Part shown: piece by piece, positions 2,420-57,302 of the stretch
Numbering within the stretch: position 1 is the stretch's first letter
Layout: every line of letters starts with the position of its first letter
Source of the DNA: Adineta vaga
Lineage: Eukaryota > Animalia > Rotifera
Reading direction: 5' to 3'
NCBI GenBank assembly: GCA_021613535.1
Contig: CP075492.1
Span: 11,284,001 to 11,348,000, forward strand
Length of the DNA: 64,000 nt
Notes under the pieces: generated by a model
What the model was told of the DNA's origin: nothing
The model's input: the letters and a program-made list of their open reading frames with translations, nothing else
The model's database searches: none
Translations under genes and position numbers: made by a program

Positions 2420-2932
2420 TCAAAATTTCAGTTCCATAACGTATGCATCGGTTCGATCTTCATAATAATTATCGAGATAGTCAATAACTGTAAAACCATG
2501 TTTTATATATAAACTATATGCACGCATATTCCATACATGTAGTTGTAATTCAACTTGTAAAGCACCATACTCACGAGCATGATCGATCATATGACGTAGA
2601 AGAAGACCACCGAGACCTCGACCACATTGAGTAGGATGAAGAGTTAAATTTCTTATGTGTGCAGTATCATCTGACGTGTGTTGTAAACCATATCCGATTA
2701 TTGAATGACCGATAGTCGTAGTCTCAAGTATCCAACAATTACATGCTGGATCATGAATAGCATCAAAAAAGATGTCTGCACGCCATGAGTAATCTTTCCA
2801 TGTATCTTGCTCAATTTTCACTACTGTTTCAATATCAAGCTCAGTCATAGGTCGAATACGATATTGATTTACATTATCCACATTGATAGTGGGTGATTGA
2901 TATTCCTTATCAAGCTCTGTATATGGTGGCAT
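2420..2932 (-). CDS. RimI-like GNAT N-acetyltransferase, copy 1 (intronless, bacterial-like)
   Basis: IRPMTELDI..V..IE start, acetyl-CoA motif QCGRGLG, N..A..LY.KHGF and YY....DAYVM C-terminus typical of RimI. Confidence 0.85.
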   Translation of the reverse strand: MPPYTELDKEYQSPTINVDNVNQYRIRPMTELDIETVVKIEQDTWKDYSWRADIFFDAIHDPACNCWILETTTIGHSIIGYGLQHTSDDTAHIRNLTLHPTQCGRGLGGLLLRHMIDHAREYGALQVELQLHVWNMRAYSLYIKHGFTVIDYLDNYYEDRTDAYVMELKF

Positions 2933-3198
2933 CTTGTTTTGTAAACTGTTCGTCTAACAAAATTATATATTCTCTATTTATCATGATCATATGTTGTAAG
3001 AATGAGTCATTGATGACGTTATAACTTACGCAACAAAATGGAAATTTCTATAAATCACGAATGATTTACCTATAACAATTTTATCAAAACTATGTGTGAT
3101 TGATATTTGACAAGAAACAAATAACTGTTCACCTAAATAAAACAATGAATGATTGTAGACAAAATCATGCATTACAAAATCATGCATTAGAATATTTT

Positions 3199-3842
3199 CA
3201 CTGCTAGCCAAAAATATAAGAATACGCACATTATTTTTGGTTTTGTTCTACTTTCTTCTTTCCTTCTTGGATTGATATATCTTTTAGCACATGCGTATGC
3301 AACTATAGTCTATGCAAACATCAATTCAGAATTTCTTCTGCATTATTTATTTTCATGAAAGAATATCTATATAAAAAAAACATTTTCCCATTCATTAAAA
3401 GTCCATCGGTAATGTTTACGAGCAAATTTTAATCGAGTACGACTATGATGAGGTTTTTAATATGGTTTTTGTTCAGTTGTAGAACTATTGTAATCGACCT
3501 TGAATAAGCGTTAACGAACTGTTCGAGCACTAATGCGTTTTCCATTTGATAAACTCTATTCAGACGCTAATTGTCAACGATCTTTTTCATTAACTTGATT
3601 GAATGACGGTCTTCTTGATAGGTAGTCAATTTATTTTTATTTTGAAAAGGTCGAAAAAAACATGTTTTTTATATGGATATTCTTTCATGAAACTAAATAA
3701 CTCCGGAGAAATTCTGAATTGATATTTGTATAGACTATAGTTGCATTCGTATGTACTAAAAGACATATCAATCCAAGGAGGAAAAAGAAAGTAGAAAAAA
3801 ACAAAAATAATTTTTTCTTTCTGATATCTTTTGCCAGCCCTG
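3199..3842 (-). mobile_element. Internally deleted Tc1/mariner-type element with ~185 bp imperfect terminal inverted repeats and a transposase remnant
   Basis: 3199-~3385 is the imperfect reverse complement of ~3655-3842. Termini read CACTGCTAGCCAAAAATAT / CAGGGCTGGCAAAAGATAT, like Tc1 ends, with TA at 3843-3844. The minus-strand interior translates with stops to ISARTVR*RL...KP...RLKFARKHYRWTFNEW, a Tc1/Tc3 transposase HTH-linker segment. Confidence 0.85.
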
Positions 3843-3993
3843 TATTTAAGAGCACACGAAAGCTATGTTTCGTAACATAATATAACTATTGATGATTTTA
3901 AACATTACTGATCTTTGTACTTGTGTTGACATTTTGACTAATAGGCAATAAAATCAATAAATTCAACAAAAAAAAATGATTCATAAATATTGT

Positions 3994-4506
3994 TTAGAAC
4001 AAAAGTAACATTTCATAAGCATCTGAAGAATGAGAATAAAAGTTCGGAAGATGTCGTACGATTTGAAAGCCATGATTAGTATATAATTTACATGCACGTT
4101 TATTTGTTGTATGCACTTCTAATCTAATATTTGGAGCATTACATTGGCGAGCATAAGCTATCATATGTTGTAAAAGTAATGTACCTAACCCTCGACCACA
4201 TCGATTCGGACGAAGAGTTAGATTCGCAATAAATGATTCATCTTTGCATACATATTGAAAACCATATCCATCTATTGAATCATGAGTTGTAATGTCTTCA
4301 AGTACCCAACATTTTGAGAATGGATTAGTAAGATAACGAAAAGTACAGTCACGCTGCCAACATTCAGCTCCCCAAATGATTTGTTCGATTTCCATCACTG
4401 CATCAAGATCACTCGTAGTCATGGATCGAATCCGATAATGATCTCGACTATTTGAATCTATTTCAGATACTTGTTTAGCATCGGTACTATCTGCTTCCGA
4501 CATCAT
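3994..4506 (-). CDS. RimI-like GNAT N-acetyltransferase, copy 2 (intronless, bacterial-like)
   Basis: IRSMTTSDLDAVMEIE, RCGRGLG, LEV.TTN.RA..LY..HGF, FY....DAYEM; clear paralog of 2420-2932. Confidence 0.85.
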   Translation of the reverse strand: MMSEADSTDAKQVSEIDSNSRDHYRIRSMTTSDLDAVMEIEQIIWGAECWQRDCTFRYLTNPFSKCWVLEDITTHDSIDGYGFQYVCKDESFIANLTLRPNRCGRGLGTLLLQHMIAYARQCNAPNIRLEVHTTNKRACKLYTNHGFQIVRHLPNFYSHSSDAYEMLLLF

Positions 4507-5098
4507 TCGATGCAATTATTGAAATATTGACTGAGTTATGTTGTTTTGTATGAAAAAAACATTACAAAGTAATGAATCAGCTTTATCGTTGTTTTTTCGT
4601 TTCTAAAATTCCAAACGTCACATGTTTTACGTTGCGTCATACTTATTGTTGTATTAAGACAAGTATGAAAATCTTGTTTTATTCCTCTCTAATCATTCAA
4701 ATTTCAATCTATTCTCTGTACATTATACGAAGAAAGTATGCGATCTGACTTTTGTATTATCTTCTGACAGTGTAAAAGACTGATACACAAAGAAACTCAA
4801 TCGAGAATGTACCTGACTTATCTTCATCTAGAAAAAGGTTATAATATCATTAGTATCAGAAAGTAATTTATTTTCTCATTAAAATTTGATCTTTTGTATG
4901 AGAATTTCACGACAGATCGAACGTCTATTTCATGTTGAAAAACGATCGGCATTCAGAACAAAATAATCTATCATTCGATTCAATTTTCATAACAAATTGA
5001 CGTGACATTTGTGAGAATGTTAACAACAACACAAAAGACTAACAAGATATTCGATCTAAAAAGATGTATTTTCATTTACATTTGATTTGATTCCAACA

Positions 5099-14616: not shown

Positions 14617-14943
14617 TTTTACCATTAAAGTCTTGATCTTAGTTTTATTTTATTCAGCAAAAGAAAGAATATACACTCTTCTTTATCATATCATCTTTAA
14701 ATAAAGGTTAACTTGTTTCTACTACATTAAATATTCAGCTGCTTATTCTACAAGTAGAAAATTGCGTTTCTTTTCTGTGTCAATACATAGCTGACGTTAA
14801 TATGAGTCATAATATGAGTAACAAAAAAATCTTGTTTTTTGCTTTTCTTGTACAACGTGACCTTTATTTTCAAACAAAAGCACATTTTGCATTGGTGACG
14901 GAAGTAGGCGAACAGTTAAAGAAAATCGTTCGTGTTTGTGAAT

Positions 14944-16218
14944 ATGGTTTTGGCAAAAATGTCGTTCCTTACGAACTTCATTGCCAATCTCGGACTGACT
15001 AGAAGTAAAAAACAATTGACCCTAGTTGAACTGCTCGATGAAAATCAACCATATAAAGAATTTCACCGTATTCAAGATAATGAATTATCCAACTTAAACG
15101 ATGATGAAAAGATTTTGCCAAGAATTCAAGGTGCTTTGCTTGGTCTTGCCGTTGGTGATGCGCTCGGTGCATCAGTTGAATTTCGACCTCACTCGTATCT
15201 AAAACAACATCCTGTTACTGATATGCAAGGTGGTGGTACATGGGGTTTAAAAGCTGGACAATGGACGGATGATACATCGATGGCCCTTTGTTTAGCAGCT
15301 AGTCTTATTGTTAAAGGTGGTTTTGATGGTTATGATCAGTTAGTTCGATATAAATGGTGGTATCGAAAAGGTTATTTATCATCAACTGGAACTTGTTTCG
15401 ATATTGGTAATGCAACGCGTGATGCAATCATTAAGTTTGAGAATCTTCAACGTCAATGTGCGAAACAATTGGGTTTATCTTCCTTAGAGTCTTCTTTCGA
15501 TCGTCCCAATGAAGAAATACATTCTCAAATAAATTTTAATATCAATTGTGGTGATAAAGAAGCTGCGGGTAATGGAGCATTGATGCGCTTAGCACCAATT
15601 CCATTATTTTATCATTGTTCAAAAGTCGAAGCTATTCACAAGGCGGCTTGTAGTGCAACTCTTACTCATGGTGATAAGAAAGCAAGTGATGCTTGTCGAT
15701 TTTATGCTGCACTTATTTGGAATGCTATACATGGTGAATCAAAAGAAAAACTTCTAGATCCGAAAAATTATCGTAATGATTTCAAACCATCACTCCATCC
15801 CGATGTTATGAAAATTGTTGAAGGTTCCTATAAAGATAAGAAAGGCTATGATGATGGGATTCGTGGGAAAGGTTTTATTTTAGATGCGTTAGAAGCTGCT
15901 TTATGGGCTTTTGATAATGATGACAATTCTTTTGAAAAAGGTGCATTAGCAGCAGTAAATCTAGGTGATGATACTGATACAACAGCTGCTATTTATGGTC
16001 AACTTGCAGGAGCAGTGTATGGAATCGAAGGAATTCCAGAACGTTGGCGTAATCTATCGTTTGAACGCGAATTTATTATTACCCTAGCTAATGGTTTGTT
16101 CATAAGAGGAAAACACTTTAATCATCCAAAACGAAAATGTGCATCTATTGAAACTATAGAAGTAGATGTTCATCCACCTAAGAGCAAAAGAAATTTACCT
16201 GGTAAATCTGCCTTATAA
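14944..16218 (+). CDS. ADP-ribosylglycohydrolase (ARH/DraG family), intronless
   Basis: GLAVGDALG, GQWTDDT, CFDIG, GNGALMR, THG, and GDDTDTTAAIYGQLAGA motifs. Start is uncertain (ATG at 14944 or 14959). Confidence 0.92.
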   Translation: MVLAKMSFLTNFIANLGLTRSKKQLTLVELLDENQPYKEFHRIQDNELSNLNDDEKILPRIQGALLGLAVGDALGASVEFRPHSYLKQHPVTDMQGGGTWGLKAGQWTDDTSMALCLAASLIVKGGFDGYDQLVRYKWWYRKGYLSSTGTCFDIGNATRDAIIKFENLQRQCAKQLGLSSLESSFDRPNEEIHSQINFNINCGDKEAAGNGALMRLAPIPLFYHCSKVEAIHKAACSATLTHGDKKASDACRFYAALIWNAIHGESKEKLLDPKNYRNDFKPSLHPDVMKIVEGSYKDKKGYDDGIRGKGFILDALEAALWAFDNDDNSFEKGALAAVNLGDDTDTTAAIYGQLAGAVYGIEGIPERWRNLSFEREFIITLANGLFIRGKHFNHPKRKCASIETIEVDVHPPKSKRNLPGKSAL

Positions 16219-20174: not shown

Positions 20175-21482
20175 ATGGATTATTTTCAACAACCAAATGA
20201 ATTTTCTGATGTAAAAATTTCATTCAAAAATGAAAACAGTAAGTGAAAGGAGATGATTGATATGATTCGCATCTTTCGGTACTCTTAGATATGGTTTTAT
20301 ATGCAAATAAAGTCATTTTATCGGAAGCATCGCCAATAATAAAAGCATTTCTAGCGATTGAGCCGGATAATACCTTCGTTATTGATGAAGATGATGAACA
20401 GTGCATCATAACATCAAATGATGTGATTGAATTATTGAAATTTATCTATCCACAATTTACAATCAAAATAACAGATCAGAATAGTAGGATTTTCCATAAG
20501 AAAAATGTGATCTTTTCAATGTTTCGATTTGTTAGTTAATGGTTTGATTCATCTATCGGAAAAGTATCTTATCGAAACACTTCGAAATGAATGTAAAAAA
20601 TATGTTTATACATGGTTAAATGATATGGAATTGACAACTGTAGATGAAAAGAAAGAGTTTCTACCAAGACATGTACTTTATAAAGATGGAACACGCAAAC
20701 ATATTGCATCAGAAATCGGTAAAAATAGTCGCAAAAAAATCGTTATGAGAGTGAATTGTATTTTACATAAACGCGCGTTTAATTTAGTTCAATCAGATCT
20801 ATTTATAGGATTAGATATTCGTGTTAGTAAGTTGATACAGAACGAATTGAAAAAGTGAAATCCGATGCGTTCTTGTCCAGGTTTGTCTGATGACTGACAG
20901 TTTATTTCGTTTATTTATATCTTATGAAGAATAAGGAGACATAAATTATAAATTTCAGTACATTATTTAGATATAGTCTCACCTGGTTATTCTTATCTTT
21001 ATTGAGTTGATGATATATTGAGAAAAATATGCAAATATGACATTTGCAAGATTGCTAATAAAAATTGAGATAAGTTTTCACTTTTTCAAAAAAAAATCAT
21101 TGACAACAAAGAAAGAGTCCAAATGAATATTGTCCTATTCATTTTTCACATAATTGTAGAATCTATTTTTTTAACATATGCAGTAACATTCTATCATTTC
21201 AAGTGATCTTTTCTTTCAGGTACATTATGTATTTGGCTTCATGAATATTCATCACGTGATGAAACTCTTTCTTCTTCAATTCTTAATATTCTCAAACATG
21301 CATCAACTGATGATCTTGAACGAAATGAAATCTTCTCACAGATGACTGATCGTGAAAAAACGAATATCTATAAGATTATCAGCGAATATTTAGAACATCA
21401 AACAATTCATGAGAAAGATTCATCGGGAGTTATTCATCATAAACAATCTACTTCGCTAATGTTCGCATCGGGTGACAATTAA
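20175..21482 (+). CDS. BTB/POZ domain protein (multi-exon)
   Basis: FSDVKI...LYANKVILSEASP...ELLKFIYP...LSEKYLIETLRNEC. Confidence 0.75.
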
Positions 21483-21550
21483 AAATGTCGAAATGAACGC
21501 GTACAGACTTTTTTTTTGTTTTTAATTTATATTAAGAAAAAAAAACGTCG

Positions 21551-21567
21551 GGGTCATCGAGAGTTCA
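21551..21567 (+). promoter_or_regulatory. Consensus DR5 retinoic acid response element GGGTCA-tcgag-AGTTCA
   Basis: Exact match to RGKTCA-n5-RGKTCA, about 440 bp upstream of the RAR start codon. Function is not demonstrated. Confidence 0.6.
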
Positions 21568-22002
21568 ACTGAAAAAAACTAATGAAAGTTCTAGTAGCAT
21601 TACTACTAGAGGAAATTGAATTTTTTTTCCTGCTTTTGATGCTAGTCAAATATGGCAGTATGCCAACATCTTATCGCCGTCTGTTTAATTATTGGTCGAC
21701 GCGGGAAAAGTGACCGGCGGCGTCGAAGACAACAACAACATGGTCCGCCAATACAGACGTACGTCTCATTCGATGGTCATTGTACAGAAAGACAAAAACG
21801 AGAGAGAAAGAAGGAAAGAAAGAAAGAGAATTTTTCTTGCTCATTCTCTCCTCTAGAGAAACACTCACTCAGCACAGCTCAACATCTTCTCATACGTCTT
21901 TTTTTTTTCATTTCAAATAAAGTAAGTCCTTTGATATATAATTTACCAAGAAAAAGTTTATAAAATTTTTAGAATGGCAAAATTTTAACGAAATAAAAAT
22001 CC

Positions 22003-24610
22003 ATGGATAACAACGAACTTCTTCATGAAACATTTGATTATGATCATTTTTTTGGTGAAAATAACGATGATTATCATACAATGACATGTTTGGAAACAAC
22101 GAATGAAAATCTTCTCGATCTTAATAATAATAATGATACACAAATGAAAAATCGGACAACAGGTAGGTTTTCTTTTATCATCTTTGTCCATCTATCGTTC
22201 GTTGCTGTTTCTTCTCCGGATGAATCAAAGCCAGATGTGCTCTCTTTAATGATGATCATCATACGATTGATCTTCATCATGCATAAACGATAATCAATAA
22301 AGAAGATATCTTAGAAAAAACACTAGTTACCGATGATATCTTGTTGAATATAATGGAATAACAACGTGAGAGAATCATCATCAATCATCGACAAAACTTT
22401 CAGCCATATTTCTTTGTTGAAAATGAATACGGAAAATCTATCTGTCATTATAGATTAGTTTGATTGTGATTAGAGACTAGATGCGTTGTCTAAAAATTCA
22501 TACGAGAATTTTAGTTTACGATATGATTTATATCAATAAATGTATATTTTTCCTTTAGGCAATATTTTAATGGGTACAACTGTAAATGAATATTTCAGCT
22601 CCGGGGTTAATATAATCAATGGTCAAGTAATTAAAACTGAAAATGTAACACAATATTTCAATGGAAATACTAATCAATATAACAATAATCATTCACAACA
22701 AACAATCAATTTCGACAATAATGCTGTTTATAATACGACGAGTAAAATTCGATTTTGTAAAATGACGTTTTTTGTAATGAAAATATTGAATTTAGTCGTT
22801 CCAAATCAACCGATTTATAATATTCAACAAGTCAATGTACAAACGATTGAAAAGCCAATTGTTGCTGCATCACCACCTCCACCACCAAGAGTTTATAAAC
22901 CTTGTGTCGTTTGTGGAGATAAAAGTTCTGGATATCATTATGGTGTTTCAAGTTGTGAAGGTATTTTATTCATAATTATTTCATTGAAAGTAAATAACCA
23001 TTTTCCTTTGTTCTTTTTTTTAAGGTTGCAAAGTACGAATTTTGATTTCCTTCTGTATAATTCAAGTAAACATATTTATTCCTTTGTAGGGATTTTTTCG
23101 ACGAAGTGTACAGAAAAATATGGCTTATCAATGTCATAAAGATCAAAATTGTGAAATCAATAAAATGACACGAAATCGATGTCAATATTGTGTAAGAAAT
23201 GAACACATTTCTAGATAAATTACGTCTCTTTTTCTTTTTAGCGTTTTCAAAAATGTTTCGTTGTTGGAATGAGTAAAGAAGAATTAAGAATATTGAATCA
23301 TGCAAAGAAATTCTTAAATCCAAATGAAGTAAAAACAACGAATAATCGTCAAAAGAAACGGACTACGATTCAATCTGTTCCATCGAATGAATCGTTACCG
23401 GTGGTTGAAACGAAAGTAGCACCTGTTGATAATGAAAAATTGATTCATATTTGTGTTAATCTACATAAATCAACATTCAATTTCAAACCATCACAAGAAA
23501 TTGATGTAATTGAAAATAAATGTTTTCTAAAAAAAAACTAAACGATATAGTTGGTACATCTAGAATAATAAATGAAGCTTTCGTGTTATAATTTAGAGAC
23601 AAAATCAACTTTCTACTTACCAACAAATTACTCATGTTTGATTTGTTTTTCAGGAAAAACCCGATATTCGCTGGCAAAAAACTGATGAATTTAGTCAGAA
23701 GGGTATCATGCAATGTATTCAATTTTGTATGCAAATGCCTGGAAATGACGAATTATCCATACAAGAACGTGCACATTTGCTTAAATTAGGTGTTCATGGT
23801 GTTGCCTTACTTCGTTTAGCTTACCGTTATGAACCTGAAGATGATAAACTATATCTATCAAATAGTTTGACAGTTGATGAAAATATTCTTATGACACAAG
23901 GTTTTGGCTGTTATGGACATACGTTCTTTCAGTTTTGTCGAATATTTAGTCGATTAGAATTAACAATTGAAGAATTTGTTCTTCTTTGTTCCATCGTATT
24001 TTTCAGTCATGGTAATAAGCGATAATTTCATTGTATGTTATCATCAAAACTCTTGTGAATTCTTCTTGATTTAGATCGCATTGAAGGTCAAGAGACGAGA
24101 AATAAAGTTGAACAAATTCAAACACGTTATTGTGAAACCGAAAGATTATATATTGTAAAAAATCGTTCTAATGATCAAATGCATTTTTCTAAATTACTTC
24201 TATTACTTTCAAAATTAAGAGCTTTAGATGCTTTAAGTAAGTTGAATTTGAATTCATTCGATAATATCATAGTTTAAATCAACTAAATTGTATTCTTTTT
24301 CAATATTTTAGTTGCGGAACGTCTTCTTTGTTTACAAATGAATACGGATGGACAAGTACAAAAATGTATTTTTGAAGTACTTCATCGTGAAGCAACGAAT
24401 GTTGTTGTAGTAAGTTATTCACTTTTTATTTCTATTATATTATTCACATAATCATTTATCTATCATTTCAAGGATATGGAAATTGATTATCTCGATGCTA
24501 TTGATACAAAACCTGATTATAGTTGGCTTGATTATCCATCGAATACACAAAACTCAATTTCTGTACCATCACAAGCAATTTCAAATAAAAATAATAATAA
24601 TAATAATTAA
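22003..24610 (+). CDS. RAR: Retinoic acid receptor (NR1B) ortholog, multi-exon
   Basis: [79 protein letters not shown] is RAR-diagnostic. The LBD aligns through [21 protein letters not shown] and H12 CIFEVL. Confidence 0.88.
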
Positions 24611-51772: not shown

Positions 51773-53685
51773 TTATTTCTTATTGCCAACTTCTTTCAAA
51801 TCAGCAATCATCGCTTCAGACAATTTGAACTTTTGCACTTTCCCCGTTGGTGTCATTATGAACTTATCAACAAAACGAATGTGCTTCGGAATCTTAAAGA
51901 ATGCTAATTTATCCATCAAAAATTTTGTGATATCTTCTACTTGACATTGTACTGCATCTGGTTTCAATTTGATCCATGCACACACCTCTTCACCATATCG
52001 TTCATCTGGAATAGAAAACACTTGTGCTTCAGCAACACTTGGATGTTCGATTATGGTATTTTCGATTTCAATTGGATAGATATTTACACCACCACGAATG
52101 ATCATTTCCTTACGTCGTGTAATATAATAAAGATAACCATCTTCGTCCATTTTAGCTTCGTCACCAGTTCGAAGCCAGCCTGAAGGTGTGAGTGCTTCCT
52201 TTGTTTTTTCTGGATCGTTATAGTATCCAGTCATGATAGGATAACCTCTTGCCCAAATTTCACCTTGCTGACCGATTGGCACAGCATTACCGTCTTCGTC
52301 AGCAACTTTGACTTCTAAACGTTGCATACAACGTCCCAATGATCCATGACGTCGTTTTGGATCGGCATCACCTGCCCACATGCCACTAGTAAGTAGAGCT
52401 GCATTTTCTGTCATTCCATATCCTTGAACAACACGTTCAATTGGAATTTCTTTTTCTAATTGTTGTAGGAAACTAGGATGCATTGGACTGGCACCAATGG
52501 CGGAAAATATTAATGAACTTAGATCGTATTTCTTTCGATCTGGATGTGTCAGCATATCACGAAAGATAATAGGTGCACCAATCAATGCAGTACATTTTTC
52601 TTCATGAATAGCCTGCATCGTCGAGGGTGTATCAGGTAGAATTGCTGGAAAAATAACTTTAGCTTTGGCAACAGCAACATTCAATACCCCAACTACTTCT
52701 GCGAAAATATGAAACATTGGAATAGGTACACATAGACGAGTGAAATATTGTCCAAGATGTTCCCATTGAGCATGAACCAAATTGAGCATACCAAAACTCG
52801 TCAATGTTGCCGCTTTTGGTTGACCCGTTGTCCCCGATGTGTAAAATATTGTTGCTGGTGAGTCAGGATTCACTGATGCTTGTCGTTCATTTAGTTTATC
52901 ATGTGATAGTTTTGCACCTCGTTCAACCAAATCCTGATATGAATGCGTGCCTGTATTCGATGATCTTTCACCAGTCAGTATCACATGCTTCAAGGTTGGT
53001 AATGCTTTTGATGATAGTTCACGAGTGGTCGAATGTTCATTCAGTTCGGGTACCAGTTTTTGAAACATCTGTAACGATGGAATGATCTTTAGCGATGGTG
53101 GTAAAATCAAACCTTTGCATCCCACTTTGTTGATACAATATTCTAGTTCACGACCAACATAAGCAGGATTGATATTGACCTATAATAATTAGAGTGAAGT
53201 AACTTATGACAAGAATACATGGATAACTTACTTTTATGAGACCTAATTTGGATGTTACATATGTCATTGCGACGTTCTCAGACGTGTTAGGTAACCACAC
53301 AGCGAAACGATCATTCTTTTGGAATCCAAGTTCTAGAAGTGATGCAGCGAGACTGTCGACTTCATGTTTGAATGACTTGAATGTATATCGTTTTTGTTCA
53401 CCTAGAATATCAAATGAAAAAGTAGAAGTATAGAATCATGCTGTGTTGTTGATAGGCGTTACTTTTGAAAACATAACATTCATGATCGGGATATTTTTGA
53501 GCTGTTTCATCGAAGCTCTGACTAATGGTTTTGTAGACGAATGGAAGTGATGAAGTGTGATGAAAATAACTAGAGGTTAATTTTGTTGATGGGTTTGATG
53601 ATGAAGAGTGTCGTATTTTAAATTGTAGAACAATCCATGATGGCTGCGGTTGAGTTAGAAAACGTTTTGTGTTACTGATAAACAT
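51773..53685 (-). CDS. ACSF2: Mitochondrial medium-chain acyl-CoA ligase, intact copy
   Basis: LTSSYFH, YTSGTTGQPK, GYGMTE, GWLRTGD, MIIRGGVNIYP.EIE, TPTGKVQKF; two introns. Confidence 0.9.
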
Positions 53686-54727
53686 ATTTATACCAAATGA
53701 GTATATGATTTGTAGAAGGTACGTGTTTTATAGATTCATTGCAAGACGAAAGCAAGAGTGACAAACCTTTTTTTCCGTTCTTTTTTATATCTATAATAGT
53801 TATGTGAAGTAATTTGTATATAGAAGAAAAAGAGAACGTTAGAAAAATATGGTAAATTATGGAATATTTGGAGAAAACAATTTTACCGAGACTGTATCGA
53901 ATTGGATACTTTCTATACGCTTTGGTGGTGGAAGTGACCGTCTTTATAATAAGTTTACAACTGTTATAGCTTATATCTTCTTAATAAAGGTAGAACTGAG
54001 TAGTAGAATTTTACTAGTTTGTAATATTTTTTGTGAGGTAAACGTGTGAACAAACATTGTGTGAAAATATTTGTTCTACATCGATAAGGATTGTGTCTGT
54101 ATACAAGAAAAATTGTTATTTTTTTATTATTCTTATTCAGAGTGCAAGTATTACCATGAAGACATCAAATTTCCTTCAGCTAGTTCAGCACTGAGCCATA
54201 TCACATATATAAAATTCAGACGATCGATATTGATTAAAACATGCGAAAAGTTATATGACGACAAAGTTTTGATATTATTGTCTCTTAGATTTGTTTATTA
54301 CCATGTGTAACAATGAGCCGCAATTATAGTCTTTTAAATAGTTATTCGTTGATTCTTCATATAACTCATCATGTTCCAGCGTACACACATATGCAACCTC
54401 CGTACCTTAAGAATGTCAACTACTGAATACAAGAAGAAGATAATTTAGTTTCCTCGAGGAAAATCATTATTATGATTAATTGAACATCTCAGTCACGTAT
54501 GTATTCAAAATACATACCGATCATATTGATCAAATAGAGTTAAAATAATTGAGCTATATGACTATCATTTGCCAAGCATTTATTCTAAACACTCCAATAA
54601 ATGTCAGATAATTGTCAAAAATTCTCTACGATTCCTACTAAAAGTTACATATTTATTTTGATTTTCAAACTTTTCGACAATTATTTTCTTCATGAAACCA
54701 TTACTACTTTAAATCGCTAAAATCAAA

Positions 54728-54747
54728 TATATATATATATATATATA
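54728..54747. repeat. (AT)n microsatellite
   Basis: About 10 AT units just downstream of the second ACSF2 copy. Confidence 0.8.
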
Positions 54748-54770
54748 GAAGAATAAAATTAACGCGAAGT

Positions 54771-56681
54771 TTAATTCTTATTGCCAACTTCTTTCAAATC
54801 AGCAATCATCGCTTCAGACAATTTGAACTTTTGCACTTTCCCCGTTGGTGTCATTATGAACTTATCAACAAAACGAATATGCTTCGGAATTTTGAAGAAT
54901 GCTAATTTATCCACCAAAAATTTTGTGATATCTTCTACTTGACATTGTGCTGCATCTGGTTTCAGTTTGATCCATGCACATACTTCTTCACCATATCGTT
55001 CATCTGGAATAGAAAAGACTTGTGCTTCAGCAACACTTGGATGCTCGATTATGGTATTTTCGATTTCAATTGGATAGATATTTACACCACCACGAATGAT
55101 CATTTCTTTTCGACGACCCACGTAATAGAGATAGCCATCTTCGTCCATTTTAGCTTCATCACCGGTTCGAAGCCACCCTGAAGGTGTCAGTGCTTCTTTT
55201 GTTTTCTCTGGATCGTTATAGTATCCAGTCATGATAGGATAACCTTTTGCCCAAATTTCACCTTGCTGACCGATTGGCACAGCATTACCGTCTTCGTCAG
55301 CAACTTTGACTTCTAAACGTTGCATACAACGTCCCAATGATCCATGACGTCGTTTTGGATCGGCATCACCTGCCCACATGCCACTAGTAAGAAGAGCTGC
55401 ATTTTCTGTCATTCCGTATCCTTGAGCAACACGTTCAATTGGAATTTCTTTTTCTAATTGACGCAAGAAATCTGTATGCATTGGACTTGCTCCTAAGGTA
55501 CCAAGAGTTAATGAACTTAGATCGTATTTCTTTCGATCTGGATGTGTCAGCATATCACGAAAGATAATAGGTGCACCAATCAATGCAGTGCATTTTTCTT
55601 CGTGGATTGCCCGCATCGTGGAGGGTGTGTAGGTAAAATTGCTGGAAAAATAACTTTAGCTTTGGCAACAGCAACATTCAATACCCCAACTACTTCTGCG
55701 AAAATATGAAACATTGGAATAGGTACACATAGACGAGTAAAGTATTGGCCTAAAAGTTCCCATTGAGCATGAACCAAATTGAGCATACCGTAGTTCGTCA
55801 ATGTTGCCGCTTTTGGTTGACCCGTTGTTCCTGATGTGTAAAATATTGCTAGCGGTGAGTCTGGATTCACTGATGCTTGTCGTTCATTTAGTTTATCATG
55901 CGATAGTTTTGCACCTCGTTCAACCAAATCCTGATATGAATGCGTGCCTGTATTCGATGATCTTTCACCAGTCAGTATCACATGCTTCAAGGTTGGTAAT
56001 CTTTTGATGAGAGTTCACGAGTTGTCGAATGTTCATTCAGTTCTGGTACCAGCTTTTGAAACATTTGTAACGATGGAATGATCTTTACGGATGGTGGTAA
56101 AATCAAACCTTTGCATCCCACTTTGTTGATACAATATTCTAGTTCACGACCAACATAAGCAGGATTGATATTAACCTATAATAATTAGAGTGAAGTAACT
56201 TATGACAAGAATACATGGATAACTTACTTTTATGAGACCTAGTTTTGATGTTGCATATGTCATTGCGATGTTCTCAGACGTGTTAGGTAACCACACAGCA
56301 AAACGATCGTTCTTCTGAAATCCAAGTTCTAGAAGTGATGCAGCGAGACTGTCGACTTCATGTTTGAATGACTTGAATGTGTATCGTTTTTGTTCACCTA
56401 GAATATCAAATGAAAAATTAGAAGCATTTAGTCCTGATATATTTTGGGGATGAATTACCTTTGAAAACATAACATTCATGATCGGGATATTTTTGAGCTG
56501 TTTCATCGAAGCTCTGACTAATGGTTTTGTAGACGAATGGAAGTGATGAAGTATGATGAAAATAACTAGAGGTTAATTTGGTTGATGGATTTGATGATGA
56601 AGAGTGTCGTATTTTAAATTGTAGAACAATCCATAATGGTTTTGGTTGAGTTAGAACGCGTTTTGTATTACAGATAAGCAT
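54771..56681 (-). pseudogene. ACSF2: Tandem ACSF2 duplicate carrying two 1-bp deletions (pseudogene or sequence error)
   Basis: Highly similar to 51773-53685. Single-base deletions relative to that copy at ~56000 (GGTAAT-CTTTTG vs GGTAATGCTTTTG) and ~55630 split the ORF. Confidence 0.75.
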
Positions 56682-57302
56682 TTTCGAAATGAATGAAGAT
56701 AAAATATTGACATAAGCATATAAAAACACGTTTTGAAATGAAGCACACTTTTCTTTTTCTCTTTTTGCTTTTGATATTTACTTAGACTATATGGGAGAGA
56801 ATGCAGAAAGAGAACAATTAACTCATGATAGATTTCAGACCTACGAAATATCATGTTCTCGACCGATAACATATCTATTCGATTTTGCTAGAAAGGTTTC
56901 CATCGTTATTTTTATAAGAAATGTGTTTTTGAAAATATAGTGTTCAGTAGATATGTATATATTATTCGGTATAAAAAGAGAATAGAAACCGATAGTTGAT
57001 ACATAATCAGAAGATAATTTATATCGGACTTTAGTGACATGCACGTGTTGAAGAAAAGGATGTACTTCTGGAAAAGTTTATTCAATTAAAATATGAAACT
57101 TATCAGTACAATGAACGATTTCAAAAATTAAAAGAAAATAGATTGAAAATAATAAACATTATTTATTGATTTTATCAAGAAGATGGAAGTTTTTTTTATC
57201 TCGAATGATCATTGTTTGCTGTTATCTACAAGTCGAAAATGATAAATTAAAGTGGTAATGTAATCTGTACATTTTACGTGGATGTTCTTGTACTATTCAC
57301 GA

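What the first reader, a model, noticed from the sequence alone, without database searches (positions are those of the whole stretch)
21551..24610. Perfect DR5 RARE directly upstream of an invertebrate RAR gene: candidate retinoic-acid autoregulatory loop
Seen: GGGTCA-tcgag-AGTTCA at 21551-21567, in the ~520 bp gap between the BTB gene stop and the RAR ATG (22003), upstream of a probable non-coding first exon (donor near 21922). Established: RAR/RXR heterodimers bind RGKTCA-n5-RGKTCA, and vertebrate RARbeta2 is auto-induced through a promoter DR5 (GGTTCA-n5-AGTTCA). My rough estimate, assuming 30% GC, is about 5e-4 chance matches per 500 bp on both strands. Inference: RAR autoregulation through a DR5 may exist in this protostome-like animal, where such a circuit is not established to my knowledge. 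Weaker half-sites occur at ~21711 (TGACCG) and ~21774 (TGGTCA).
Basis: partly seen in the sequence, partly recalled or inferred. Interest (0 to 1): 0.9.

Follow-up and report, generated by a model that had tools for sequence, protein, structure and literature searches.

The report
Rotifer receptor gene's conserved self-control switch
Every bdelloid rotifer lineage checked keeps a textbook binding site for the retinoic acid receptor just in front of that receptor's own gene, which suggests the receptor controls its own production as it does in vertebrates, although whether retinoic acid is the signal is untested.

Summary
The window is Adineta vaga. The gene is a spliced, RNA-supported RAR (545 aa, I4U23_014373). 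A perfect DR5 (21551-21567) lies 452 nt before the ATG.

The DR5 sits upstream of RAR in all 12 bdelloid lineages with promoter sequence: Adineta, Rotaria, Didymodactylos, metagenomic species and both ancient homeologs. Eleven of 12 half-site bases are invariant and the twelfth varies only within the consensus (G/A). The spacer letters drift but its length stays at five. Neutral retention is excluded (about 1e-36). Homeolog B lacks the BTB neighbour and keeps the element. It is absent at two non-bdelloid rotifer-type RAR loci.

Best reading (0.6): RAR/RXR binds its own promoter. Binding, sign and ligand are untested, and other nuclear receptors could use the site (0.3). The 'retinoic acid' part is uncertain: only about 11 of 25 pocket residues are kept, though K236, R278 and S289 are among them. 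I found no paper describing a conserved RARE at a protostome RAR gene. The scan noted the same motif on another piece of this genome (s1-494362), probably the homeolog.

The parts
21551..21567 (+). DR5 element RGGTCA-n5-AGTTCA, the conserved candidate RAR/RXR binding site
21611..21620 (+). conserved promoter block (GAAATTGAA core), factor unknown
   Evidence: alignment A1; coordinates
21653..21666 (+). NF-I-like palindrome TGGC-n5-GCC(AA), present 37-137 nt downstream of the DR5 start in all 12 lineages; a degenerate GGTCA half-site lies just 5' of it
   Evidence: NF-I identity is from my own knowledge of the consensus
21859..21921 (+). non-coding first exon; 21859 is the 5'-most base in RNA contigs, the true start is unknown and may lie further upstream
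   Evidence: joint 21921-21973 with 63 letters on the upstream side
21922..21972 (+). 5'-UTR intron, GT..AG, donor conserved in all 8 aligned promoters
21974..21988 (+). short upstream ORF (M-A-K-F-stop) directly after the acceptor; a 3-4 codon uORF at this place in 9 of 12 lineages
22003..24610 (+). RAR (NR1B) coding region, 10 exons: 22003-22162, 22559-22741, 22796-22960, 23025-23032, 23090-23191, 23242-23505, 23654-24011, 24075-24236, 24312-24409, 24473-24610; 545 aa
   Evidence: 100% identical to A. vaga I4U23_014373, P0119; introns seen in RNA contigs
23025..23032 (+). 8-nt microexon inside the P-box (G-C-K)
   Evidence: table 5c (three RNA runs), (kept in 9 of 11 bdelloid loci)
20175..21482 (+). 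upstream BTB-domain gene; neighbour in A-type copies and Didymodactylos only, not needed for the DR5

Best explanation
The DR5 is a binding site for an RXR/RAR heterodimer in the proximal promoter of the RAR gene itself, about 250-300 nt upstream of the 5'-most known RNA. It works next to an NF-I-like site and other conserved blocks, so the bdelloid RAR regulates its own transcription. SHOWN: gene identity, splicing and RNA support, the element's position, strong purifying selection on both half-sites and on the 5-bp spacing, independence from the upstream gene. INFERRED: that the occupant is RXR (5' half) plus RAR (3' AGTTCA half). OPEN: the sign and the ligand. The receptor may repress its own promoter when unliganded, as proposed for mollusc RARs, and be released or activated by a ligand of RXR or of its own altered pocket. 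A vertebrate-like all-trans-RA positive loop is one sub-case (about 0.2 overall).
For: Perfect DR5 on the same strand upstream of RAR in 12 of 12 bdelloid lineages with promoter sequence. It is the only perfect DR0-DR8 in 150 kb of 13 loci. Half-sites: 11 of 12 columns invariant, the R column G or A; spacer columns have 2-3 states; flanks full of indels. Neutral retention about 1e-36 on a tree of 8.2 substitutions per 4-fold site, and 6e-6 even at a tenth of that rate. It survives in Didymodactylos, where the flanks look unrelated to the other promoters, and in homeolog B without BTB. The DNA-binding domain is 55-57 of 66 identical to annelid, mollusc and vertebrate RARs with the same P-box. 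Annelid and mollusc RAR/RXR bind DR5 in vitro (PMC5821490; 10.1101/2025.03.09.642214). RARbeta autoregulation through a promoter DR5 is established (PMC10218549). A. vaga has an RXR-like gene (PMC3846280). The modelled LBD folds as an RAR with helix 12.
Against: No binding or expression experiment exists. Other receptors can use RAREs (HNF4, COUP-TFII). The T-box is changed in all bdelloids (KEELR for KEAVRND), so dimer geometry on DNA may differ. No perfect DR5 near two non-bdelloid rotifer-type RAR loci (L020 Brachionus calyciflorus, L029). Only about 11 of 25 RA-contact residues kept. I did not obtain or check the bdelloid RXR sequence, nor Aldh1a or Cyp26.
Confidence: 0.6

Rival explanations
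1. The DR5 is a real nuclear-receptor site, but the main occupant is another receptor (COUP-TF/Svp, HNF4, TR2/4, an NR4A/RXR pair, or a rotifer-specific receptor). RAR would then be a downstream target in a cross-regulatory cascade, not an autoregulated gene.
For: HNF4alpha acts through a DR5 in the RARbeta promoter and COUP-TFII binds RAREs (PMC10218549). Many receptors share the AGGTCA-reading P-box (own knowledge). Earlier notes list several expanded or unusual nuclear receptors in this genome (unchecked). Extra GGTCA-type half-sites are conserved nearby.
Against: Strict 5-bp spacing with a 3' AGTTCA half is the canonical RAR/RXR form (PMC5247814). The 5' flanks of the half-sites are not conserved as monomer sites would need. 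The element sits at the RAR gene, where vertebrates have the same arrangement.
Confidence: 0.3
2. The conserved bases serve the upstream gene (3'-end processing, or an RNA element in the BTB 3' UTR) or a non-receptor factor, and the match to a RARE is incidental.
For: In A-type copies the element starts only 69 nt after the BTB stop codon.
Against: B homeologs have no BTB sequence and keep the element. In Didymodactylos it is about 550 nt past BTB. RNA contigs of BTB end near 21513 and none covers the DR5 (contigs cannot prove absence). Changes stay inside the RGKTCA consensus.
Confidence: 0.05
3. Chance match kept by recent common ancestry.
For: A single perfect DR5 in a 64 kb window is not rare by itself (7 of 100 shuffles).
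Against: 4-fold sites are only 32-97% identical between these loci, mostly 40-70%; retention probability about 1e-36.
Confidence: 0.01

Closest known systems
Vertebrate RARbeta2 promoter DR5 (betaRARE), positive autoregulation by RA
   Same: Canonical DR5 in the proximal promoter of an RAR gene, same orientation as the gene; conserved among species (PMC10218549).
   Different: First half-site is GGGTCA or AGGTCA, not GGTTCA. About 250-300 nt from the known RNA 5' end rather than next to the start. One perfect DR5 rather than two DR5 plus a DR8. The receptor has a strongly altered pocket and T-box. No function tested. Sequence homology with the vertebrate element cannot be shown.
Deuterostome CYP26 DR5 RARE (amphioxus, hemichordate, vertebrates)
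   Same: Phylogenetically conserved canonical DR5 in a retinoid-pathway feedback gene.
   Different: Different gene. That study found no such RARE at annelid or limpet CYP26 and concluded direct RARE control of CYP26 is not ancestral to bilaterians (PMC5247814); the bdelloid element is in a spiralian.
Mollusc RAR/RXR (Nucella, Crassostrea): binds DR1/2/5, does not respond to RA, likely repressor
   Same: Spiralian RAR with conserved DBD and altered pocket. Oyster RAR mRNA rises after ATRA (PMC8060629).
   Different: No promoter RARE was analysed for oyster RAR (no occurrence of 'promoter' in that paper). The bdelloid pocket differs more (11 of 25 against 13-17 of 25 kept).
Platynereis and Priapulus RAR, low-affinity RA sensors
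   Same: Platynereis RAR is the best PDB match by sequence and by fold (6EU9). Priapulus RAR also differs at 14 of 25 pocket residues yet binds RA at micromolar levels (PMC6947571).
   Different: No autoregulatory element reported in the passages I read; the bdelloid substitutions are at other positions (L268H, G393I, A397L, F230 to T/A/G).
Monogonont rotifer (Brachionus) RAR
   Same: Same rotifer clade within RARs.
   Different: Only 3 of 25 pocket residues kept in B. koreanus (PMC6947571; 5 of 25 in B. calyciflorus by my list); normal T-box; no perfect DR5 in 16.5 kb around the gene.

Membership tests
RAR (NR1B) protein | C4 zinc-finger DBD with CEGCKG P-box, closest to RARs | tested here: met
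   Exon 5 best hits are RARs (59 bits against 42 for the next family); 55-57 of 66 identical to other RARs, 39-40 to TR and EcR
RAR (NR1B) protein | LBD closest to RARs, with helix 12 | tested here: met
   Top 20 PDB sequence hits are RARs; model pLDDT 89 with a C-terminal helix, best fold match 6EU9 (the alignment used held RAR sequences)
RAR (NR1B) protein | Groups with RARs in a tree against TR, EcR, E75, NR4A | tested here: met
   RAR plus rotifer group, SH-aLRT 92, quick tree, long rotifer branch
RAR (NR1B) protein | T-box KE(A/S)VRND after the DBD | tested here: not met
   KEELR in all bdelloids; a lineage-specific change, does not alter orthology
RA-activated RAR | RA-contact residues of the pocket conserved | tested here: inconclusive
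   About 11 of 25 kept, including K236, R278, S289; F230, L233, L268, G393, A397 changed. The list of 25 is from my memory; only 5 positions are confirmed by PMC6947571
RA-activated RAR | Binds RA and activates transcription | not testable with these tools
   needs ligand-binding and GAL4-LBD assays
DR5 RARE | RGKTCA-n5-RGKTCA consensus | tested here: met
DR5 RARE | Conserved half-sites and spacing with free spacer letters | tested here: met
DR5 RARE | Bound by RAR/RXR | not testable with these tools
   needs EMSA or ChIP; annelid and mollusc RAR/RXR bind DR5
RAR autoregulatory loop (RARbeta2 type) | [quoted passage not shown] | tested here: met
   292 nt upstream of the 5'-most RNA base, 253 nt in a B-type copy; independent of BTB
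RAR autoregulatory loop (RARbeta2 type) | RXR partner present | not tested
   RXR-like gene reported in A. vaga (PMC3846280); sequence not checked here
RAR autoregulatory loop (RARbeta2 type) | RAR mRNA induced by RA through the element | not testable with these tools
   no RA-treatment data at hand

The most novel reading that the evidence does not exclude
The bdelloid element is the surviving protostome counterpart of the RARbeta2 loop: RAR/RXR binds the DR5 and a retinoid (or a new ligand of the remodelled pocket) induces RAR. Direct RARE-based feedback on the receptor would then date to the bilaterian ancestor rather than to deuterostomes.
Probability: 0.15. Interest if true: 0.85.

Novelty: new member of a known kind. 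Interest (0 to 1): 0.64.

Why it matters
Protostome RARs are known, and their DNA binding has been shown mainly on synthetic consensus probes. I found no deeply conserved natural RARE at a protostome RAR gene in the library searched (most subscription journals are missing from it). A published survey concluded that conserved RAREs are lacking at lophotrochozoan CYP26 genes (PMC5247814). A natural DR5 kept through the bdelloid radiation and in both homeologs gives a concrete native target with which to ask what a divergent protostome RAR does on DNA, whether it represses or activates, and which ligand it or RXR reads. It also makes the age of RAR autoregulation testable, ancestral or convergent.

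Tried and rejected
Four first searches failed on off-by-one exon coordinates and were corrected. The single-sequence structure prediction was useless (pLDDT 39). The sigma-70 promoter scan is irrelevant to an animal gene. The 103-aa ORF 21652-21963 across the promoter (annotated as a 97-aa gene in A. ricciae) is rejected as coding: frame-breaking indels in alignment A1, variation concentrated in the NF-I-type spacer, no RNA contig over 21570-21736. TGACCG at 21711 is rejected as a conserved half-site. TCATTC at 21841 as the transcription start is not supported, because a B-type transcript begins about 60 nt upstream of that motif. BTB-RAR fusion proteins in databases (P0249, P0250) are read as annotation merges, since RNA shows a separate RAR 5' exon in A. 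vaga. Monomer sites (RORE, NBRE) are rejected because the 5' flanks vary. No papers on Cyp26 in rotifers or on RAR in bdelloids were found. The careful tree did not finish; the quick tree was used. The first exon query was out of frame and contributed no usable columns. No genome-wide DR5 scan of A. vaga was possible.

Full report
Observation. The motif GGGTCA-tcgag-AGTTCA is at 21551-21567 on the + strand. It is the only perfect DR5 in the window; shuffles give 0.08 on average. The chance of one in a 520-bp gap is about 5e-4, or 1.4e-3 if DR1, DR2 and DR5 are all allowed. Alone this is suggestive only, since a genome holds many such gaps.

The gene. Ten GT-AG exons from 22003 to 24610 give an open 545-aa frame. 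It is identical to Adineta vaga I4U23_014373 on CP075492.1, so the animal is a bdelloid rotifer. Contigs from three runs guessed to be RNA show the coding introns spliced out, an 8-nt microexon in the P-box, and a non-coding exon ending at 21921 joined to 21973. The DBD exon and the main LBD exon both hit RARs first in the PDB, the best LBD hit being Platynereis RAR. A quick ML tree puts the rotifer proteins, on a long branch, in the RAR group against TR, EcR, E75 and NR4A (SH-aLRT 92). An alignment-based model (pLDDT 89) matches RAR LBDs best and has a helix 12. RAR is already known from the monogonont Brachionus (PMC6947571), so the gene itself is not new.

How the searches were run. Database searches used single exons by reference or protein ids returned by tools; the joined model was not sent to any search tool. 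I did join the exons inside a script to check the reading frame, and compared that local file with proteins and loci already fetched. Pocket numbering was transferred through Anolis RARgamma.

Conservation of the element. I fetched RAR loci from A. vaga (both homeologs), A. ricciae, A. steineri (both), Rotaria sordida, R. sp. Silwood1, R. socialis, Didymodactylos carnosus and metagenomes. Every bdelloid locus with promoter sequence has a perfect DR5 on the gene's strand: 430-560 nt before the ATG in most, 249 nt in a compact metagenomic species, 3.7 kb in Didymodactylos. Across 12 lineages, 11 of 12 half-site columns are invariant. The first varies only between G and A, which the consensus allows. 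The five spacer columns each show 2-3 bases, and the spacing never changes although the flanks carry many indels. In 150 kb of 13 loci it is the only perfect direct repeat of any spacing from 0 to 8. Four-fold degenerate sites of the same genes give a tree 8.2 substitutions long (66 columns, fixed topology, so rough). Neutral retention of both half-sites in 11 lineages has probability about 1e-36, and 6e-6 even at one tenth of the rate. In Didymodactylos the flanks look unrelated by eye, yet the DR5 and a nearby NF-I-like palindrome persist.

Which gene it serves. In A-type copies the DR5 starts about 70 nt after the BTB stop. B-type homeologs have no BTB sequence and keep it. BTB RNA contigs end near 21513 and none covers the element. 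It is the upstream edge of a conserved module (GAAATTGAA block, NF-I-like site, ATGGTCAT block, first exon, donor) leading into RAR. It lies 292 nt before the 5'-most RNA base in A. vaga and 253 nt before the start of a spliced B-type contig. Contigs cannot fix the true start.

Limits of distribution. No perfect DR5 was found around the Brachionus calyciflorus RAR (16.5 kb) or around a second, unnamed non-bdelloid rotifer-type RAR (12 kb, 9 kb of it upstream). With two loci this shows only that the element is not universal in rotifers. I could not examine annelid, mollusc or priapulid RAR promoters, so ancestry against convergence is open.

Mechanism. Two AGGTCA-type half-sites at fixed spacing point to a nuclear-receptor dimer (inference). 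The DBD keeps the RAR P-box and 55-57 of 66 residues. Annelid and mollusc RAR/RXR bind DR5 in vitro (PMC5821490; bioRxiv 2025.03.09.642214). A. vaga has an RXR-like gene (PMC3846280). Vertebrate RARbeta is autoregulated through a promoter DR5 (PMC10218549). Autoregulation by RAR/RXR is therefore the most economical reading (0.6). The main rival is another receptor, since HNF4 and COUP-TFII can act through RAREs (0.3). The bdelloid T-box is altered. From my own knowledge, the RAR T-box matters for DR1/DR2 contacts more than for DR5, so this may narrow the receptor toward DR5, but it is untested.

Ligand. About 11 of 25 RA-contact positions are kept (list recalled from memory; five positions confirmed by PMC6947571). 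The carboxylate anchors K236, R278 and S289 are kept in Adineta and Rotaria (K236 is A in Didymodactylos). F230, L233, L268, G393 and A397 are changed, some to bulkier residues. The LBD is well conserved among bdelloids (73-95% identity), so it is functional in some way. Priapulid RAR binds RA with 14 differences, while mollusc RARs do not bind it with fewer, so counting cannot decide. A repressive loop released through RXR ligands, as proposed for molluscs (PMC7827873), is as plausible as RA induction. The title's 'retinoic-acid' loop is thus the least supported part.

Comparison and verdict. It works like the RARbeta2 autoregulatory RARE in anatomy; membership by function is not testable here. 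I found no report of a conserved RARE at a protostome RAR gene, nor any paper on bdelloid RAR. One survey found no conserved RAREs at lophotrochozoan CYP26 genes and placed that direct control at the base of deuterostomes (PMC5247814). Oyster RAR mRNA rises after ATRA, without promoter analysis (PMC8060629). The finding is a real, strongly constrained cis-element, a new member of a known kind in an unexpected lineage, and it offers a native target for a simple test. Interest 0.64.

Noticed in passing
window 21974-21988; same place in L002, L003, L004, L008, L009, L013, L016, L022: A 3-4 codon upstream ORF starts one base after the 5'-UTR intron acceptor in most copies (9 of 12 lineages have one at this place), with variable peptide and frame: possible translational damping of RAR.
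   Followed up: partly
window 23025-23032: 8-nt microexon inside the P-box, kept in 9 of 11 bdelloid loci; Didymodactylos, one metagenomic B copy and L029 have only the second intron; Brachionus has neither.
   Followed up: yes
window 23242-23300 (exon 6): All bdelloid RARs replace the otherwise conserved T-box KEAVRNDRNKK with KEELR..., while monogononts keep it.
   Followed up: partly
window 21653-21666; L031:4555-4570: NF-I-like palindrome conserved next to the DR5 in all 12 lineages, including Didymodactylos.
   Followed up: partly
P0249 (Rotaria socialis), P0250 (Didymodactylos, L031:3001-10404): Database models fuse the BTB gene with RAR across the promoter; probably annotation merges.
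   Followed up: partly
window 22963-23087: A DNA contig of run X1 skips both P-box introns; probably another nuclear-receptor gene without these introns laid on this place. Unexplained.
   Followed up: no
L018:3322-3338: A second, one-mismatch DR5 1.5 kb upstream of the perfect one in a metagenomic bdelloid; not seen in other loci.
   Followed up: no
window 15017-15032, - strand: A perfect DR4 inside the ORF 14932-16218 (ADP-ribosylglycohydrolase-like); likely chance.
   Followed up: no
window 2420-4515 and 51773-56729: A pair of intronless GNAT (RimI-like) acetyltransferase ORFs, and tandem near-identical acyl-CoA synthetase-like ORFs; named by eye only.
   Followed up: no
L001-L019, L031: Conserved gene order epimerase, PH-FYVE, (BTB), RAR, PLAT-repeat gene across bdelloids; BTB lost from homeolog B.
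   Followed up: partly
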